A stretch of DNA of 64,000 nt from Auanema rhodensis (taxonomy: Eukaryota; Animalia; Nematoda). A model generated the notes under the pieces. The model saw nothing but the letters and a program-made list of their open reading frames with translations, had not been told where the DNA came from and made no database searches. Shown piece after piece: positions 1,680-38,506 of the stretch (its first letter is position 1; each line of letters starts with the position of its first letter). The position numbers were made by a program, and so were the translations under genes. Location: NCBI GenBank assembly GCA_964057225.1, contig OZ059895.1:6200001-6264000 (forward strand), in the 5' to 3' direction.

Positions 1680-4600
1680 ATGCAAACCATAGACAATTTG
1701 AATGAATTTTGGTCTGATCCAGTAGTCAATTGGTTCGATTACTTTGTTAATCGATCAAAGTTTAATGAATTGCTCGAAGATACGAAGAAAAATAAAGGTT
1801 TTCATTGAAAATACACCATAAGGTAAATGCAATATTTAAAGATACAATCATATCTTTGGCTTTGCAATTTTGCGAACAAGCAAGTGTAACTGAGAAGGAA
1901 TATGATGTTATGGCTCAGAAATCTTTCCCAGCTGAAGATCTTCAGTTTATTCAGCGGAAATCCATCTGTCTATGGCTATGTTCCCTGTCCTGTTTAGCTT
2001 CCTTAAATTGGGACATTGAGTTATTGATAGACAAGCAGTATGTCTTCAGTTTGCCATGCTTTCCTTATCTTTGTTATTAAGAGATGTTTTGGCGGTTAGA
2101 CCACTCATGGACTATATCGAACGATTATGGTTGAATCGTGAAATCGTCACGGATCCGATATTTGGGGAATGGCTTCATGCACGTTGGATATTTAGTTTAG
2201 ATCGTAGGTTCCGAGTATTGTCTCCACCAGCTAAACAAATTGTTAATAATCCGTATGTCTAAATTAGAAAAAAAAAGAAAAGTTATTCGTTTAGATTACA
2301 AGTACAAGATCTCAATTTGCAAAGACAAGAGGGTATTCGTAAACTTGTTCAAGAAGCCCGAGATTTGCGGATGATTCGGGTATGATTTCCCAAATAAATG
2401 CATAAATAAGTTAGTTTGATTATAGGCTCTCGATTTCCTTGAGAAACTTATCAGTGACCCAAAGCAGATTTATGTACCTGGAACTATGTGTTTCCTTCAA
2501 CCGTTTCTTGAGGTTTTTATTAAATAGAGTAAACATTCTTTTATCGTATTGTTGTAGGAGTCTGGATTCTCACTGAGTGTAGGAATTTTGGGAACAAATG
2601 TTCTATTCGATTCTCCTCCAAAACCAAAACTTACCTATGAATGCACACTTCTGGATCCAAAAGAAGTTATAAATAAGGTAAGGACGAGTTATAGTATATT
2701 GCTATATTGAAAATTTTAATTTAATTTAGACACGATACGATTTGGCTTGCTATTACTTCTCCGAAGGTAGATTAGACCGATGTTTAGCAAATATGCTGAA
2801 TGTATGTGTGCAAAATATTCTATTATTGCACTATTCTAATCTATTTTAGACAAAAATTAATATTGGGGAACATCCCTTAGTTACTGTATCATATGAAGAT
2901 CTTGTAGGATATTATATAGCTCTTCACATTACTCCGTCTTTTCCTATTAAGGAGTTTCCTAAATTAATGGTTGTTGATCAAAATGTATTTAAGCAATATG
3001 ATTCTTTTCTTCTAATTTACGAAACTTTAGTTATTGAAAAATGAAACATCAGTTTATCGAAGACGGTCTGTATATCGCGGACGAAGTGAGAACATTGCCA
3101 CCGGACAACTACAGGCAAGCTTGTCATCTTGAAAGAAAAAATTTAAAATGCATTCGTTTTAAAAAGAGTTATTTCAGACTTCTATCCGAGCTGATAACTT
3201 GGTACGAGATGTTTTAGAGGGTAAGAATAGTTTAAATCGAATACATCTTAAAGAAAAAGCCATCCTTGAAAAGTTTGTGAAGGTAATATCACATTCTTTG
3301 TTCAATTTAAACAATTATTTCTGGATTACATTTTCAGACATTAGCTCAATCTTTGCCTAGAATAAACCGATTAAATAGTTTGTATCTACAAGGAACTTTA
3401 CGATTTTTATCGTTTTCCATACCCGGACTTAGAGAAGAATTAATTCGAAACAACTTTCCTGAAGAATACCTTTGTGGTGCTCATCAACCTATTGTTGAGA
3501 AAACTTTTGCAGCTCCTGGTATTTCCATTATAAAAGGTGAGTCATCAAGCTGCTTCGAATAATATTGAATGGAGAGGATTTCTGTTTTTTTTTATTTTTT
3601 TTATTTTCAAATCTTAAAAGTTGAGCTGGAGACTAGTCTGAATTGTGTTTTCTTAGCGATCGCACTCAGGAATTGCCAGTCGGGAGTGTCTCAGAACCCC
3701 GCAGGGTAACCTTTTTCTGGCACACTCCCTCATTCCTTCGAATGAGGTCCTTCTCGAACCGAAATGACTTTATCTCAGACCTTCCCGGGGATACAAGGCT
3801 ACATGAGCCTGTGAGTGAACCCCAACGCTGTCTTCCAGCCAACTCGTGTGTTGATTGACTAGGCCTGTCTATATAGCCACTGTGTCATTTGCGCCGTATG
3901 CGATACGAGTTTGAATTGTACATCAACTGATCAATACAGTCTAAATAGATTTTGAAAGAGAGAGATTGTTGCCTTATAGAGACAATATTCATGCGTTTGA
4001 AACAGAAATAGATAATTTTTTGGTCTTTAATATATTTTCACGTTGAAAACAAGAGTCAAACAGCGTTCATCCTAAGAACATCATCATAACGCACAAACAA
4101 CGCAAATTACTTTGTTTTCTGCTCTTTCGAGAGTTAAAAGGAATCGAATATGAATTCAATTAACACATTTATTTAAGTTTTACTTGCTTCTGATGTTCCA
4201 TTATGGAAAATCATCGCATCTTTCGATGTCGGTGAGTTAAAGGAAACTGTGAACAGCATGAAACACTTCTCTCTTCCGAGACTAGTGAGTTAGTATCTTA
4301 ATAAATTCTCTTAACTATAAGTTCTAGCTTAAATATCCGGAGTTGTTAGGAGAATATGTACTTGTCGGTAGACCAATCAACGACTTTCATGCTTTATTGC
4401 TTGGTAAAATGAACCAATTAGCTCAAATAGGTGTAAGTTGTTTCTATGAAAGGTGGAATTATTTAAACGTGATGTTCCTATTTAGAATCACCAAGATTGG
4501 CAGCAGTTTTGTAATAATATCGTAACTGAATTAGGTCAGCTAGGTAATCAAAATAGAATGCGATTTGTATTAGAAGTATGTGTCTAATTTTTATATAATA

Positions 4601-6465: not shown

Positions 6466-7465
6466 TTACAATTTAACATATTCTGGTTCACCATAATAGA
6501 CTATTTCTCTTCCATCATTTAATTTCCATAATTTATGCTGCTGATTTGGTTCACACGGTTCTTGATGAAGAACTAAATATCGTCGTTGTTGGCCTTCAAG
6601 AAAATAAGGGATATTGGTGCTTAGAATGTTATTAGAACTTACGAGTTTCTATGTTCTTTTTGATGCTACATTGGGCTACTTGTTCTTGTTCTTTTGATGA
6701 TCCATATATGTAAGCTCCTAGACCACCATTACGAAGATAGAGAGAATCATGCTTACGTTTATTCTCAATCTCTTTGGGTGTTACTTGATCTTTCATAACT
6801 TCTTGAGAATTTTCATTATTATAGATGAAAGCCCCAAGATTTCCACGGTTTATGTAACGACTGTGATGAGCACTTTTTGGGTAATAAGCTCGAAAGCCTC
6901 TGAACCGTCGACCATCAGGAAGTATGATGACAGCTCGAAGAAGACGATCATCAGGCTCATGTTGTCCTCTTCCTATACGCACTGGCCCCAATTGAATACC
7001 CGATAGTTGTGGTAAATGAAGTAGATCTTATTGGATTTTAAACAATATTAATGAGAGTTTGTAATTATTCTTACCATGAAGCATTGTCGTTGCATAATTG
7101 TCATCTTCGAGATCTTTAGAAGACGAATGTCGGTTAGCGTGCAAAACAGTACCATTTGGGAATGTGATAAGCCCACGAACGAAGTTAGACTTCTGTAATA
7201 AGGTGTATAAGGAAACAGTAATATTTGACTACTGGAATAATCAGAAGCTACTGAAGATTGTTTCTAATCAAACCTTATCAGATGATCGTGCTAATCGAAA
7301 ATTATGAAGGAAATCATTTGTAATAATTCGTTCTCTAAGCGAGTTATTAAAAATCAAGTAAATCAGAGAATATATGTACCTAACACCGAAATCGAGATCC
7401 GAAAACAGGTAAACAGCTTTAATCAGAAAAGAAGCTAACAACAAAACTCTAAACAAGCTGCTCAT
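6466..7465 (-). CDS. Uncharacterised secreted protein (5 exons)
   Basis: CAG|ATG start at 7465; MSSLFRVLLLASFLIKAVYLFS is signal-peptide-like; phase-consistent splicing gives ...FGVR/ERIITNDF..SSDK/KSNFVRGLITFPNG..MLH/DLLHLPQ..RAVIILPDG..ET/RQQRRYLVLHQEPC..EPEYVKL*; includes ORF 6632-6991. Confidence 0.7.
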
Positions 7466-7819
7466 CTGCCAAATATCGAAAAGACGAAAGCTTGATGTGA
7501 TAACAAAGATTGTGTACACATCTTATCATATTGCCATTTCTTCTATACATTGTCCAATATGTCAAATATACAAATATTACATCACTGGCTCAACAAATTT
7601 TTTTTCAGATTTTTGAAATAAAAAGAATGTAACTCTTCATTTAAAAATACAAATATATATAGGATAGATTTTATTTTAAAAAAATTAGTTTTTTTCTTTT
7701 ATTCGCTAGGTTAATGTTTATAAAATTTGAAATTTCATATATGGTTGCTATAATCCTTCAAGCAAACTAATCATCTGGTACTGTTCATTAAGTAAATGAC
7801 TTTTAAGAAACAATGGCAG

Positions 7820-7960
7820 GTAGTTTGCCTTTGGAAGAGAGACTGGAGGTAACATCACATCTTAGAGCTCCGACGAGGTCGAAAAGGAAATACCACAGGT
7901 TATTCAGGCTGTACCTAAGGTGGAGATGAGCATTTTTGGAACATTACCCATGGTGCTAGC
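7820..7960. promoter_or_regulatory. GC-richer island with clustered CCNNNGG palindromes (candidate AP-2 enhancer)
   Basis: GCCTTTGGA 7827, ACCACAGGT 7892, ACCTAAGGT 7913, ACCCATGGT 7946, set in very AT-rich flanks. Confidence 0.5.
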
Positions 7961-8489
7961 TAAGTTAGTAGGCTATAATGAAGACTTCGTAAAATAGCTA
8001 ATAATAAAATATATAATAATGAATATTAAATATTGAACAATAATGATTTCAATAACTTTTAAACTTTTTTTAACCGAACTTTTTTTGAAAAAACCGAAAG
8101 TGAAACATAGAATGAAATTTGGAAAAACAAGAGCTTGAGGGCTAACAGAGACTACACTGAATATATTTATATAGAAACAATAAATATGAATTTATTTTTA
8201 TTGATACTATTAAATTGAAGTTTCAAATTATATATAAAATTCTTTAACTAAGAAAAGTATATTTGTAGTTTACTATCTTAATATGAACTGATTTTGTTGA
8301 AATTATTGTTCTTGGAACTATTTATATTGAAATTGATATATTTGAGAATGTTTGTATTCAATGAAAATTATTGAAATTATTATAATATACAAGAATTATG
8401 CTGAAATAATGAGCTTTATTAACTTTTTTTATTATAAGTTCACATTTATTATTGAGTTTTTATTATGAATACCTAGTGTTCACAATTTC

Positions 8490-8610
8490 CAGATGCCGCC
8501 GGAGATTGGGCATGGGAGGGGTCATATAGCTCCAGAAGGAAACTTTGGCAACACCTGAGGTTAATTAAGGCCCGCCCCTTCTCCGGTAGTGAAGATATAT
8601 AAGGGCTAAA
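8490..8610 (+). promoter_or_regulatory. Core promoter of the AP-2 gene (GC box, CCNNNGG sites, TATA box)
   Basis: GCCGCCGGA 8495, ACCTGAGGT 8553, GGCCCGCCCC 8569-8578, TATATAAGGG from 8596; acceptor TTTTTCAG directly before ATG 8819. Confidence 0.6.
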
Positions 8611-8818
8611 CCTGGATCAGATTCATCACATCCTTTTATAAATAAGGTAATTACAATTACATTACTTATAAGAACGATTCTTCAAAACATTTTGAAAATT
8701 CTAGTTTTATTTGCAATTTTATAGTTTACTCATTCATAATAATCTCATCTTTTTTTGCTCATTTTGTTTCAATTGTCATTTTCTTATTTTTTATTGGTCT
8801 TATAAGGATTTTTTTCAG

Positions 8819-10205
8819 ATGTCGTTTGCTAACACTCCAGTTTCCAGCCAAGAGCAAAAGCCTGGCTGTATGGAATATCCCATTACTCCTGGCCCTTATG
8901 AAATGGTACGGATCACTGTTATCCAATTGATTTATTAATGAATATCTTAAGATTCATACAATGCTAAATATAATTCTTTATCTAATTTACCTTTTTTTTC
9001 CAGAGCCATCAAATGCACTCACAGCCCAACCAACTGCAAACTCCACAGTTGAGTAACTTCTACACTCAGCAACTTCCAATGCTTTTTGATCCAAGTGCTT
9101 TGAACTACACAGAAAACATGATGGCAATGGTAAATTATTTTTTTCTATATTTGTGATATAATAACTTATGGTTTTCAGAGTTATTGGGCACAACAGCATC
9201 ACCAGTTTATGACTCCAACTTCATCTGCTCCACTTCCTTCTCCCACATCAACTGATTCAGGAATTAGCTCTAATAATTCTCCAGATTCTCCAACAGAACA
9301 ACACGGCAGTGAATCTTTTGGAAAGATGTGTAAGTCATTATTCAATATAGGATATATGTAGATTCATTTTCATTATTTCAGCTAAGTCAGACGACATGGT
9401 TGATGACGAAAAAGTGTTCTGCACTGTTCAAGGTAGATTGAACCTTGTTGGAAACCTTCGCACATATAGAGTAACCAAGCCAGAAATCCTCAGACGTGTA
9501 AACCCACCTGAGTGCATGAACAGCAGTACTCTTGCTGCTTACCTCAGAAAGTAAACTATTCTATCTCAAACCATCCTAATTTATATTATTTCAGAGCTAA
9601 GACCAAGAGTGGAGGTGTTGAATTAAGACAACAGTTGGAAAAGGAGGGTATTCGTCTGCCAACCAACAGAAGACGTGCTGCTCCACATACTGTTTATTCC
9701 GCTATGACAGAAGAAGAAGCCCATCAAGCTGGACTTGATTTGGATATGCTCCTTCGCAGTTTCTTCCCTGTTGAAGAGATCAGCCAGTATATGGCCAGTC
9801 GTGCTATGTCTCCACAAGAGCGCGAGGAACGCAAAAGAGATCTTCTCGGAGTGCTGTAAGTTGTTAAAAGTCAATCCTTTTGTTAATTGCCCTCTTTATA
9901 GTCGATTTGCCGAAGAGATGTCTCATTTGTTCGAAACAGTACAAGTTCCTATTATGGGAAAGTCAGTACAAAACCGTTTCTACAGCGAACAAATGCAACA
10001 AAAGATGGAACATTTATCAGCCGTTTCTCATGGATTTGGTCTCTACAGTACAAAGAGTTTTAAGTTTGTTGATAAGGTTGTCGCTGCCAGGACTCTTCAA
10101 CTTTTGGAACAGCCTCAACTTGGCACTCCTCAAGTTACCCAACCTCAGATGCCTCATATGGCGCAATACATGCAATCCATGCAATCTCATAACATGACAA
10201 ATTAA
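8819..10205 (+). CDS. AP-2 (TFAP2/aptf-family) transcription factor, divergent
   Basis: VFCTVQGRLNLVGNLRTYRVTKPEILRRVNPPECMNSSTLAAYLRKAKTKSGGVELRQQLEKEGIRLPTNRRRAA aligns with the AP-2 DNA-binding domain ([48 protein letters not shown]); C-terminal HLSAVSHGFG corresponds to HFSLITHGFG. Confidence 0.92.
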
Positions 10206-10869
10206 TTTTTATACTTATAAAGTAGTCGATGGTAGCCTTTAAAAGGCAACTTAACCAATCCTGTGCAAATCTAATCACTATGTCAGTCAGGCGCTGTAAA
10301 TTTTATATGCTTATTAATAAGTTATGACTTTATCTTTCGAAGAACAGGTAGTTCAAGATTGTAATTTGCGCGTTTAATTAATTCAAATAAGTAAGCAAAT
10401 TCTTAATATTAACATGTAAATAAGTCATCGTATATTATAAATACGTCATATTTTGTGTCTTACTCTTGTCAATGTTGTGTTGTTTTCCAATGCTTAATAA
10501 ATATTGAAAATATAATATTTTTACTTGTTACAATGTGTTTTTCGTTCGCGTTTATTTCCAACTATTTCATACCGGCTACGAACTGATTTTAAAAACTGCT
10601 TCGCTGTTCAATTTAATTTCTTTCAAAATATTTGCTTCAAATTTTGTTTACTTTTAAAAATAGTTATATTTGCTGTTTTATTTGTTCCGATAATTTTCTA
10701 AATGAGAAATAATGACTTTTGTTAAGAGTTAGCGGTAAACTGAAGAGATTGTAATAAAACTGCTCTATTGCTATTAAGCTGCCCTACTTTAAAGGCGTGA
10801 CGTAGAAGAGATACGTGACTTCAAAGTTTTGGACTGTTGGGCTTCTTGTATGTAGATTAACTTATCAAA

Positions 10870-35910: not shown

Positions 35911-38506
35911 ACTAACTATATGCAGAAAATAGATATTTTTGCTGTCATCTGATATATAAAAAATGAAAAAAAAAACTTTTTTTTTCTTCATGTTATATCA
36001 ACAGACTAATGAACACATGTGATGCAATGGTCATGATAACAGAGACCGAAAGAGATCATCATTGATATTTCTAGTCCAAAAAATAATATTTCAAAGACCA
36101 AAATGGGCAAGACAGATTTATCGAATTAGCTAGATTTCCAATCATTTTCTTTCCCTTTGTTGCTTATCAGTTTTCGTGCTTTGATCTCAATTGAACTTCA
36201 GGCCAGGATAGGCGTAAGACTGCAGAAGAAATCAGCAGACGGTCCAGATAAGCGTGCAAAGAGAGACAAAAGATGAGAAAAAGAGGGTGAATTTGGTAAA
36301 GTAAGAGAGAGAGAGAGAGAGATAGAAAGAAGGTTTTTGCTCTAAAGGTGAGTTATCAAAGAAAGAAATAAAATTTTTTGGCTTCGTTTTTGCATCATCT
36401 TAGATTCAATGGCAAATAAAGAGAATGAACAGCTGAAAAACCTATTTGAGATTCTCCCACGTTTTCAGTCAAGTTTCAGTGTTCTTATCCATCATCATCA
36501 CATTTAGTATCTATTTCCGTTTAGTTCGTTTTGTCTTTATGTGACCCAGGAATAACCAGAAAAAGACTGCAGATTTTTGTTAATTCTTCACGTGAATCTC
36601 ACGTTCTGTTCTTTTGACGTATGTTGGCCAGGTTTCATTTGCGACTTTGCGGACTTGAAGAGCGGTTGTTTTTTCTCTGCTTCTCTATTCCTCTTTGTCT
36701 CATTTTCCCTCTATAGAATTTATTTTGAAATGCTTTAATGATATTACGAAATAGAAGGAAAAAGGTAAATCATCTCTCCGAATATGATGGCATTAGAAAA
36801 TAAGGGGAAAATCGGCAAATATGGTATGGAAGAGAGAGCGATAAACGCACTGATCTCTTTATTATTTTTTTTTTATTTCAAAGCGAACGCAGCTACAGTT
36901 CATATAATCAAGTGCAAACATCATCACACATTGAACCCTCTTTCTCTTTCTCTCTTTATATATGGAAAGGGGGAAGGGGGGGGGGGAGTTGCAATGATAC
37001 ATTACACACAGATTTGTAGACAAAGCTTGTCTAGCAGGTGCAAGTAGTGAGAATAGAATAAATCCGTCCGAATGAGAATAAATTCTAGACAAGAATAACG
37101 ATAGAAATAGATAAAAAGAGAGGTAAAGAGAAAGATGAAAGATAGACATCATGTAGATAAGTAGAGACAGATAGCAGCGCCATTTTCATCTGCTTTATGA
37201 TCGACAAAGCTTTTCTAAGGACAGGACACGAAAAAAAAAATGCAGGAAAGCTAAAAAAAAGAAAAGAAAAAGGTTAAATAGAGAAAAAACATCGACGATA
37301 ATCAAAATAATCAAAGATATAACATCTTAGAATCTCTTTATGTCTTTCCTCCCTCTGTATCTATCTTTATGTAATTTCTATACAGAGCTTAAAGAGCATG
37401 AACATAGAAAGCGAAGACATTTCTTGGTAGCATAAAGCGATCAAAGGTCAAAATTTTTGCTATTCCGGACATTTTTTTAGAAAGAAATCAAACGACAGCC
37501 TTCTTACTTGATGTAAGTTGCATATATAAGCTTGATATTTCATCCATGTTAAATTAATAGAAGAAATGCTGTGGACTCAAAAAAGCAAATACACGAAATT
37601 TCAAGTGGAATTTGTTCTCCTTAGGCCATTAAGAGCAGAACGGTCATCATCATCTTTGTAGATGAGGACAAGGACGACCTCGTCGCCGCTTTATAAATCC
37701 CTGGGCTTTATGTGCAACCAAAGTTCAAATGTACTTGCAAGATATATGAATAGACAAAGATAAATATGAAACATAATAGAAAACAAAGAAGGAAAGTGAA
37801 CTCACCACTTGTCGATGTCGCAGGCTCCGTTGCTATTGGAACTGCTGGCTTCTTCCGTCGTCGTTGCGGGCGTTGGTGCGGCGGCTCCTCCACTGACGGC
37901 AGCCGCTTTCATGATCAGTGCTAGATTCGCGGGCCAAGCTGTGCCGGCCGCAGCAGCAACAGTCTTATTCAGCTGATCCATATCAATCGTCGTAACGGAT
38001 TGTGAATGGGTCAGATGATGATTCGGATGGTTCAACTGATGCTGATGCGGCGATGACGACGTTAGAAGCTCCGTTGGCGTCGTGATGGTGGTGGCGGCGG
38101 CGGCGGCGGCAGCAGCGGCAGCAGCACCGGCAGCGGTGTTGGTTAGATGATGATGGTGATGATGCCGAAAATGATGATGGCCGGCAGTCGGCAGAAAAGC
38201 TGGGGGTGCGACGGCGGACGACGTGGTGCTCGGCGTCTGAAGAAGAACGTGATGATGAAATGGAGAGGGTGACGGCGATGGCGGCGTAGGCGAAGTAGAT
38301 GCCGAGGAGGCCGATGAGGTAGCTCCAGACGACGCAGCGGCAGACAGTATGGAAGACGGCGTCGTTGCGGGAGCTGGAGTTATTGACGTAACCGACTGAT
38401 GTGGTACCGTCGGTAGGACTGAAGTCAGAACGGACGTGTTTTCGGAGTTACAGCAAGATCTCTCTTGCTCGAACAGAAGAGAAGCAGGAAGAATTCTGAA
38501 AGCCAT
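27865..38506 (-). CDS. Nuclear hormone receptor, HNF4-derived nematode type (C4 zinc fingers plus LBD), with a 233-aa low-complexity N-terminal exon
   Basis: Exon 38506-37806 ends ..DIDK-TG|gtgag and exon 29674-29534 starts tttcag|T-TGG, giving [69 protein letters not shown]; LBD exons 29130-27865 (ELAAVKAIMVLDPNAPGLS, ARFAHLLMLI); TAG 27865-27867. Confidence 0.9.

What the first reader, a model, noticed from the sequence alone, without database searches (positions are those of the whole stretch)
7827..8561. ACCNNNGGT palindrome cluster upstream of a divergent AP-2 gene: possible rewired autoregulatory loop
Seen: four exact ACC-N3-GGT sites (7892, 7913, 7946, 8553), three within ~65 bp, plus GCCTTTGGA (7827) and GCCGCCGGA (8495), all confined to the two GC-richer islands upstream of the gene. 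A rough base-composition estimate expects well under one such site in this span. Known: AP-2 dimers bind GCCNNNGGC. Seen: this protein differs in the conserved DNA-binding region (GRLNLVG for GRLSLLS; AYLRKAKTKSGG for GVLRRAKSKNGG). Inference: protein and sites may have co-evolved to an ACCNNNGGT specificity and form a feedback switch.
Basis: partly seen in the sequence, partly recalled or inferred. Interest (0 to 1): 0.72.

Follow-up and report, generated by a model that had tools for sequence, protein, structure and literature searches.

The report
Conserved odd AP-2-type sites upstream of AP-2 gene
Upstream of a fast-evolving nematode AP-2 regulator gene lie ACC-N3-GGT sites, three of which a distant sister species keeps in place while the letters between the halves change, so they are real protein docking sites, possibly for the gene's own altered product.

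Summary
Four of the window's five ACC-N3-GGT sites lie in the 1.35-kb region upstream of a six-exon AP-2 gene. The fifth is in a coding exon, and there is no canonical GCC-N3-GGC in 64 kb.

In the syntenic locus of Auanema sp. JU1783, silent sites are saturated (35% identical). Three sites persist there at matching positions:
- Half-sites are 18/18 identical; spacers are 3/9.
- Sites 1 and 3 are exactly 54 bp apart in both species.
- Site 4 keeps its exact distance to a CCGCCC box and a TATATAAGG box.

Of 256 GC-rich dyad types, only this one recurs in both species. None of 1,500 shuffles matched it.

The DNA-binding exons are 96-98% identical between the species. They keep the main base-reading residue K257 but have a remodelled Loop1 (S222G, S223N, K226T), the loop that reads the outer base pair, where the sites differ from GCC-N3-GGC. 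Human TFAP2A/B bind aCC-N3-GGt only weakly.

The sites are almost certainly functional. Autoregulation by an AP-2 with changed specificity is the leading reading but untested (about 0.4). An identical first-reader note on this stretch exists; it adds nothing independent.

The parts
7892..7900 (.). Site 1, ACCACAGGT, with the conserved left flank GGAAAT (7886-7891)
   Evidence: It matches ACCTGGGGT at L001 8965 with the same GGAAAT flank. Both half-sites are identical and the spacer is 0/3 identical.
7913..7921 (.). Site 2, ACCTAAGGT, found in the window species only
   Evidence: The aligned JU1783 sequence is GCCCCTGAG, which is not a dyad.
7946..7954 (.). Site 3, ACCCATGGT, with the conserved left flank GAACAT
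   Evidence: It matches ACCAACGGT at L001 9019. It is exactly 54 bp from site 1 in both species with no indel between them.
8553..8561 (.). Site 4, ACCTGAGGT, the promoter-proximal dyad
   Evidence: It matches ACCTTAGGT at L001 9744. The offsets to the CCGCCC and TATATAAGG boxes are identical in the two species.
7827..7835 (.).
   Evidence: Present, but the right half is not conserved in L001. Probably irrelevant.
8495..8503 (.).
   Evidence: Present and not conserved in L001.
7840..7851 (.). Conserved 12-nt block AGACTGGAGGTA in island 1. It looks like a splice donor or another factor's site.
   Evidence: Identical at L001 8915-8926. The upstream ATG frames differ between the species, so it is not a conserved coding exon (read).
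8562..8604 (+). Core promoter module: TAATTAA (8562-8568), CCGCCC (8572-8577), TATATAAGG (8596-8604)
   Evidence: CCGCCC and TATATAAGG are conserved at identical offsets from site 4 in L001. The TAATTAA core is kept but shifted by 1 nt (GGTAATTAAT). Their roles as GC box, TATA box and homeodomain site are inferred from consensus knowledge.
8819..10205 (+). AP-2 family gene with six exons: 8819-8905, 9004-9129, 9179-9329, 9382-9550, 9595-9855, 9902-10205
   Evidence: AG/GT boundaries and an open frame. Pfam TF_AP-2 hits exons 4, 5 and 6. Exons 4 and 5 match TFAP2A/B structures 8j0k and 8j0q. The orthologue is P0001, 367 aa.
7380..7465 (-). Approximate first coding exon (signal-peptide-like) of the gene that diverges from the AP-2 gene; start codon at 7465-7463
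   Evidence: The orthologue is a 260-aa gene with no Pfam hit at L001 7602-8562 on the minus strand. Pfam was also blank on the window exons.

Best explanation
The ACC-N3-GGT dyads at 7892, 7946 and 8553 are functional binding sites for a dimeric transcription factor with AP-2 geometry: two CC/GG-reading units held 3 bp apart.

The leading candidate is the product of the adjacent gene. It is a fast-evolving nematode AP-2 paralogue. Its Loop2 lysine (K257), which reads the CC/GG core, is intact. Its Loop1, which reads the outer base pair, is remodelled (S222G, S223N, T224L, S225R, K226T).

Binding would occur at the promoter-proximal dyad, 43 bp upstream of the TATA box beside a GC box, and at two upstream dyads exactly 54 bp apart (about five helical turns). 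This would let the protein feed back on its own transcription, as human AP-2 alpha does on its own promoter.

Shown here: the sites exist, are non-random and are conserved with spacer turnover; the DNA-binding domain is divergent yet constrained. Inferred: who binds, the altered outer-base preference, and the sign of the feedback.
For: - Clustering.
- Orthologous locus: L001 in Auanema sp. JU1783 has the same gene order (INTS8, a 260-aa minus-strand gene, AP-2, Golgin_A5, Vta1, RhoGAP).
- Neutral divergence: four-fold sites in the AP-2 coding sequence are only 42/119 identical, so neutral DNA is saturated.
- Site conservation: three sites are kept in place with half-sites 18/18 identical and spacers 3/9 (Fisher p about 3e-4, my arithmetic). 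The 54-bp spacing and the site-to-TATA spacing are exact.
- Look-elsewhere correction: this is the only one of 256 dyad types recurring in both species, with 0 of 1,500 shuffles as extreme. The chance of three or more sites in the JU1783 intergenic region alone is 4e-4.
- Protein family: Pfam TF_AP-2 and PDB matches to TFAP2A/B.
- Structural logic (PMC10450164): K257, S222 and S247 read the bases, with S222 on the outer pair. The CC/GG positions tolerate no change; the outer position is the most tolerant. S222A costs 16-fold and K226A 35-fold in affinity. A 3-bp spacer is imposed by the Loop1-Loop2 ruler.
- Rarity of the change: S222 is Ser in 95 of 109 family DNA-binding domains. Gly occurs only in rhabditid paralogues.
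- Constraint on the domain: the DNA-binding exons are 96-98% identical between the two species.
- Precedent: human AP-2 alpha is reported to be positively autoregulated (PMC2929203).
Against:
- K257, which hydrogen-bonds the outer G in TFAP2A, is retained, and human TFAP2A/B show only weak binding to aCC-CGA-GGt.
- The left flanks (GGAAAT, GAACAT) are conserved but the right flanks are not. That is odd for a pure homodimer site and hints at a composite element or another factor.
- Island 1 is 427-489 bp from the diverging neighbour gene's ATG but 865-927 bp from the AP-2 ATG, so it may serve the neighbour.
- Relatives with the S222G change in Pristionchus and Mesorhabditis have no ACC-N3-GGT cluster upstream.
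- Only two species could be compared.
Confidence: 0.4

Rival explanations
1. The dyads are conserved binding sites for a dimeric factor unrelated to AP-2. They could also be composite sites that include the conserved GGAAAT or GAACAT flanks. Their position beside an AP-2 gene would then be coincidence.
For: The left flanks are conserved asymmetrically. Human AP-2 binds this exact palindrome only weakly. Other conserved blocks in the same region (AGACTGGAGGTA, GTTCACA-type blocks, TAATTAA) show that several factors act here.
Against: I know of no other metazoan family with an xCC-N3-GGx dyad (own knowledge). All seven sites in the two species have exactly N3. RFX X-boxes use N2 with GTT flanks, nuclear-receptor half-sites need GGTCA, T-box and Grainyhead dyads use N2 or N0, and none of these fits the flanks (inspection).
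Confidence: 0.3
2. The sites are low-affinity sites for canonical AP-2 paralogues, or for a heterodimer. This would be cross-regulation within the family without any change of specificity.
For: The inner CCTNAGG of sites 2 and 4 matches the preferred AP-2 core (own knowledge). The outer base is the most tolerant position. C. elegans has four AP-2 genes and heterodimers have been proposed (PMC4866721).
Against: Replacing both outer bases with A/T reduces TFAP2A/B to weak binding. Selection kept A/T at all six outer positions of the three conserved sites over saturating divergence, which is unexpected if G/C would bind better. I could not confirm canonical paralogues in Auanema.
Confidence: 0.15
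3. The island 1 dyads (7892, 7946) regulate the diverging secreted-protein gene (ATG at 7465, minus strand) rather than the AP-2 gene. This is compatible with any binder.
For: Island 1 is nearer that gene in both species, about 430-490 bp against 870-980 bp.
Against: The same dyad sits in the AP-2 core promoter at a fixed distance from its TATA box, which links the motif to the AP-2 gene. Enhancers in compact nematode intergenic regions can act on either neighbour (general knowledge).
Confidence: 0.2
4. Chance clustering in GC-richer promoter DNA, with no function.
For: Taking the window alone and any dyad type, a three-site cluster appears in 6-7% of shuffled windows.
Against: The cluster is replicated at orthologous positions in a species with saturated neutral sites. 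None of 1,500 shuffles matched it after correcting for 256 dyad types. Spacing is exactly conserved.
Confidence: 0.03

Closest known systems
Human TFAP2A/TFAP2B bound to GCC-N3-GGC (PDB 8j0k, 8j0l, 8j0r, 8j0q; PMC10450164)
   Same: The Pfam domain is the same. The window's exons 4 and 5 align over Loop1, helix 2 and Loop2, and K257, S247, R254 and A256 are kept. The sites share the CC/GG cores and the obligatory 3-bp spacer.
   Different: The outer base pair is A:T instead of G:C on both halves, a palindrome the human proteins bind only weakly. Loop1 is remodelled (S222G, S223N, T224L, S225R, K226T), and S258T and N260S differ in Loop2.
Positive autoregulation of the human AP-2 alpha promoter (cited in PMC2929203)
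   Same: AP-2-type sites lie upstream of an AP-2 gene.
   Different: Here the loop is only inferred, the organism is a nematode and the half-site is non-canonical. This promoter has a TATA box and a GC box, which the human promoter is said to lack.
C. elegans APTF-2 acting on a conserved glp-1 promoter motif (PMC8602670)
   Same: A nematode AP-2 acts through a short promoter motif found by conservation between species.
   Different: That motif is GCC-type, is bound in EMSA and lies in a target gene. Here there is an ACC-type dyad in triplicate upstream of the AP-2 gene itself, with no binding data.
Rhabditid divergent AP-2 paralogues (Pristionchus P0004, P0066 and P0107 domain 1; Mesorhabditis belari P0093)
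   Same: They share the rare Gly at position 222, and Pristionchus P0004 and P0107 also share the (V)G..RTY Loop1 signature. All are long-branch sequences outside the canonical AP-2 clade.
   Different: The Pristionchus proteins carry two AP-2 domains in tandem. There is no synteny and no ACC-N3-GGT cluster upstream of these genes. Orthology with the Auanema gene is unresolved.

Membership tests
AP-2 (TFAP2) transcription factor family, protein | Pfam TF_AP-2 (PF03299) domain above the gathering score | tested here: met
   Exon 4 scores 51.4 bits, exon 5 64.9 bits and exon 6 26.3 bits against a cut-off of 23.4. They cover profile positions 1-44, 46-129 and 137-183.
AP-2 (TFAP2) transcription factor family, protein | Sequence similarity to the solved DBD-HSH domains of TFAP2A/B | tested here: met
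   8j0k and 8j0q match with E-values from 3.7e-11 to 4.2e-10 for exons 4 and 5.
AP-2 (TFAP2) transcription factor family, protein | Loop2 and helix-2 DNA-contact residues K257, R254, A256 and S247 | tested here: met
   All four are retained in the window protein and in P0001. Residue roles come from PMC10450164.
AP-2 (TFAP2) transcription factor family, protein | Loop1 contact residues S222 and K226 | tested here: not met
   S222 is Gly and K226 is Thr. Ser occupies position 222 in 95 of 109, and Lys position 226 in 100 of 109, representative DNA-binding domains.
Canonical AP-2 binding site, GCC-N3-GGC | CC and GG at positions 2-3 and 7-8, separated by 3 bp | tested here: met
   True of all four window sites and all three JU1783 sites.
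Canonical AP-2 binding site, GCC-N3-GGC | G and C at the outer positions | tested here: not met
   A and T at every site. No GCCNNNGGC occurs in the 64-kb window or the 21-kb L001 locus.
Canonical AP-2 binding site, GCC-N3-GGC | Bound by an AP-2 dimer | not testable with these tools
   Needs EMSA, PBM, SELEX or ChIP. The human proteins bind aCC-CGA-GGt weakly.
Transcription-factor autoregulatory loop | Candidate sites in the factor's own promoter or upstream region, under selection | tested here: met
   Site 4 lies 43 bp upstream of the conserved TATATAAGG box. Three sites are conserved at saturating divergence.
Transcription-factor autoregulatory loop | The factor binds these sites and changes its own transcription | not testable with these tools

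The most novel reading that the evidence does not exclude
A rhabditid AP-2 lineage has switched its outer-base preference from G:C to A:T by remodelling Loop1 (S222G, S223N, K226T) while keeping the K257 core reader. It sits in a conserved self-feedback loop through three ACC-N3-GGT dyads. This would be a natural change of specificity, with matching cis-sites, in a family whose motif is reported to be conserved across Bilateria.
Probability: 0.27. Interest if true: 0.75.

Novelty: new variant of a known kind. Interest (0 to 1): 0.58.

Why it matters
AP-2 factors are cited as a family whose DNA motif has stayed the same across about 600 million years (statement quoted in PMC4805538). They are clinically important in humans, where Loop1 and Loop2 mutations cause branchio-oculo-facial and Char syndromes.

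This locus offers a natural variant in which the loop that reads the outer base pair has been rebuilt. Beside it lie conserved sites that differ from the consensus at exactly that base pair. That gives a compact, directly testable case of a protein and its DNA sites changing together.

It also gives a two-residue-scale hypothesis for how AP-2 reads the outer base. Even if another factor turns out to bind, the three dyads with fixed spacing are a well-defined regulatory module in a little-studied nematode genus.

Tried and rejected
1. Structured RNA or small RNA gene in island 1. Rfam found nothing there at the gathering score or at E up to 10. Folding gave z-scores of -0.28 and +0.36. Rejected.
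2. The two islands as duplicates of each other or as copies of a repeat. There is no significant local alignment and no other copy in the window. Rejected.
3. Island 1 as a conserved alternative coding exon (ATG 7813 to a GTAACA donor). The JU1783 frame has a stop and a different phase. Rejected as coding. A non-coding first exon is not excluded.
4. RNA evidence. Four runs, only guessed to be RNA, hold 0.35-0.38 of the sampled words of 7000-10400. Local scripts that counted motifs did read the whole window file.
5. More orthologues.
   - The word search with the exon 5 piece found nothing.
   - The word search with P0001 found only itself.
   - The word search with a seven-sequence nematode alignment found only ascarid proteins.
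   - The representative search gave one orthologue, P0001.
6. Motif transfer to relatives with the S222G change. There is no ACC-N3-GGT cluster upstream in Pristionchus or Mesorhabditis.
7. RFX X-box, nuclear receptor, T-box, Grainyhead, COE, Runx and Myb readings of the sites. The spacing or the flanks do not fit across all seven sites (inspection only).
8. Pfam on the diverging neighbour gene was blank.
9. Joined exons. The joined exons were translated once in a local script to check the frame. No joined sequence went to any search or fold tool.

Full report
**What the locus is.** The window is AT-rich nematode DNA with short introns. Other notes of this scan name the genome Auanema rhodense (unchecked). 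The closest database protein comes from Auanema sp. JU1783, which supports the genus.

A six-exon gene on the + strand (8819-8905, 9004-9129, 9179-9329, 9382-9550, 9595-9855, 9902-10205) has AG/GT boundaries and an open frame. I searched it exon by exon. Exons 4, 5 and 6 hit Pfam TF_AP-2 over profile positions 1-44, 46-129 and 137-183. Exons 4 and 5 match the solved TFAP2A and TFAP2B DBD-HSH domains 8j0k and 8j0q.

The upstream neighbour is a gene on the minus strand with a signal-peptide-like first exon (ATG at 7465) and no Pfam hit. So 7466-8818 is a 1.35-kb region shared by two genes that point away from each other.

**The observation.** ACCNNNGGT occurs five times in 64 kb. Four copies are at 7892, 7913, 7946 and 8553. 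The fifth, at 38406, lies inside a long coding ORF. There is no GCCNNNGGC in the window.

Local composition predicts 0.027 sites in island 1 and 0.035 in island 2. One of 200,000 shuffles of island 1 gave three sites. Island 1 also has the densest CCNNNGG cores in the window.

Taken alone the cluster is less striking. If any of 224 GC-rich dyads is allowed, 6-7% of block-shuffled windows show three in 70 bp. The window by itself therefore could not settle the matter.

**What island 1 is not.** It is not a known or structured RNA. It is not a repeat or a copy of island 2.

**The sister species.** A search of protein representatives with the exon 5 piece found P0001 (367 aa, 98% identical over exon 5). 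Its locus L001 in assembly GCA_943334845.2 (Auanema sp. JU1783) has the same gene order: Ndr, INTS8, a 260-aa minus-strand gene, AP-2, Golgin_A5, Vta1, RhoGAP.

The two species are far apart. Four-fold degenerate sites in the AP-2 coding sequence are only 42/119 (35%) identical, which is saturation. The intergenic regions align only in short blocks.

JU1783 nevertheless has ACCNNNGGT at 8965, 9019 and 9744. That is three of the four copies in its 21 kb, all in the orthologous intergenic region. They correspond one to one with window sites 1, 3 and 4:
- GGAAAT-ACC-aca-GGT matches GGAAAT-ACC-tgg-GGT.
- GAACATt-ACC-cat-GGT matches GAACATa-ACC-aac-GGT.
- CACC-tga-GGT followed by CCGCCC and TATATAAGG matches CACC-tta-GGT followed by the same two boxes.

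The half-sites are 18/18 identical and the spacers 3/9 (Fisher p about 3e-4, my arithmetic). Sites 1 and 3 are exactly 54 bp apart in both species with no indel between them. Site 4 keeps identical offsets to the CCGCCC and TATATAAGG boxes.

Corrected for multiple testing, ACC-N3-GGT is the only one of 256 GC-rich dyads (spacers 0-7) found at least twice in both intergenic regions. No block shuffle of 1,500 reached three.

Kept half-sites, free spacers and fixed spacing are the signature of sites for a dimeric DNA-binding protein under selection.

**Who binds.** The dyad has the AP-2 architecture. In the TFAP2A-DNA structures, K257 in Loop2 reads the GCC/GGC bases. S222 in Loop1 and S247 contact the outer G:C pair. 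The Loop1-Loop2 distance enforces the 3-bp spacer (PMC10450164).

The second and third positions (CC/GG) tolerate essentially no change, whereas the outer base is the most tolerant. Even so, aCC-CGA-GGt, the palindrome type found here, gave only weak binding for TFAP2A and TFAP2B, against 19 and 18 nM for the consensus.

The Auanema protein keeps K257, S247, R254 and A256. Its Loop1 reads GRLNLVGNLRTYRVT where the human protein has GRLSLLSSTSKYKVT, that is S222G, S223N, T224L, S225R and K226T. S222A and K226A cost human TFAP2A 16-fold and 35-fold in affinity.

Among 109 representative AP-2 DNA-binding domains, position 222 is Ser in 95. Gly occurs only in rhabditid paralogues: Auanema, domain 1 of the Pristionchus proteins, and Mesorhabditis. 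In a tree the Auanema protein is a long branch outside the well-supported canonical clade.

The domain is not decaying. Exons 4 and 5 are 96-98% identical in protein between the two species despite saturated silent sites.

So the protein differs from canonical AP-2 at the element that reads the base pair where the sites differ from the consensus. K257, which also hydrogen-bonds the outer G in TFAP2A, is unchanged. Whether Asn223 or Arg225 reads an A:T pair is my speculation.

**Points against.**
- The left flanks of sites 1 and 3 are conserved and the right flanks are not, which suggests composite elements.
- Island 1 is nearer the neighbouring gene than the AP-2 gene in both species.
- Relatives with the S222G change show no ACC-N3-GGT cluster upstream.
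- Only two species were available, because all further homology searches gave nothing closer.
- No read evidence could be obtained. I worked beside those places afterwards and sent none of their letters to search tools.
- The four runs that hold about 0.35-0.38 of the sampled words of 7000-10400 are only guessed to be RNA.

**Comparison with what is known.** Positive autoregulation of the human AP-2 alpha promoter is in the literature (cited in PMC2929203). A nematode AP-2 (APTF-2) binding a conserved GCC-type promoter motif is also known (PMC8602670). The AP-2 motif is described as conserved across Bilateria (PMC4805538).

The new elements would be the non-canonical outer base, its match to a Loop1 change, and the triple-site arrangement with fixed spacing. 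I class the finding as a new variant of a known kind.

**Verdict.**
- The sites are functional cis-elements: about 0.9.
- An AP-2 family protein binds them: about 0.5.
- The full reading (own product, altered specificity, feedback): about 0.3-0.4.

Noticed in passing
window 3621-3842 (-): Nuclear RNase P RNA gene (Rfam RF00009, 124.5 bits). It lies in the region syntenic to the INTS8 gene of L001, as another first-reader note says.
   Followed up: partly
P0004, P0066, P0107 (Pristionchus fissidentatus, P. entomophagus, P. pacificus): These AP-2 proteins of 585-679 aa carry two complete AP-2 DBD-HSH units in tandem, which may form a dimer within one chain. Domain 1 has the same rare Gly222; P0004 and P0107 also share the Auanema VG..RTY Loop1 (P0066 has VGAQIKY). 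Domain 1 also has GK in place of AK in Loop2.
   Followed up: partly
L002 9756 and 9798 (Mesorhabditis belari): Two CCC-N3-GGG dyads 42 bp apart lie 203-245 bp upstream of the divergent AP-2 gene P0093, out of three such dyads in 23 kb. They can also be read as COE/UNC-3-like CCC-N2-GGG motifs. One has a CATTAAACC flank that recalls Auanema site 3.
   Followed up: partly
window 8562-8568; L001 about 9753-9760: A conserved TAATTAA homeodomain-type core directly abuts the right half of site 4. In C. elegans the LIM homeodomain factor LIM-6 controls aptf-1 expression (PMC4805538). Orthology to aptf-1 is not established.
   Followed up: no
window 8434-8444 and 8477-8493; L001 9633-9643 and 9676-9692: Two conserved blocks share a GTTCA(C/T)A core (AGTTCA-like, nuclear-receptor-type half-site) just upstream of island 2. 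The reverse complement of the GAACAT flank of site 3 resembles them.
   Followed up: no
window 7840-7851; L001 8915-8926: A perfectly conserved 12-mer AGACTGGAGGTA that looks like a 5' splice site. It could mark a non-coding alternative first exon or another factor's site.
   Followed up: partly
window 8790-8818; L001 9975-10001: The conserved block TATTGGTCTTATA..GATTTTTTT(C/T)AG lies immediately before the ATG. It is probably the 3' splice or trans-splice acceptor region. A 5' UTR intron donor is visible in the window (about 8646) but not clearly in JU1783.
   Followed up: no
window 6632-7465 (-); L001 7602-8562 (-): The diverging neighbour encodes a protein of about 260 aa with a signal-peptide-like start, repeated G(N/G)LGA(F/Y)IY motifs and no Pfam hit.
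   Followed up: partly
   Followed up: no
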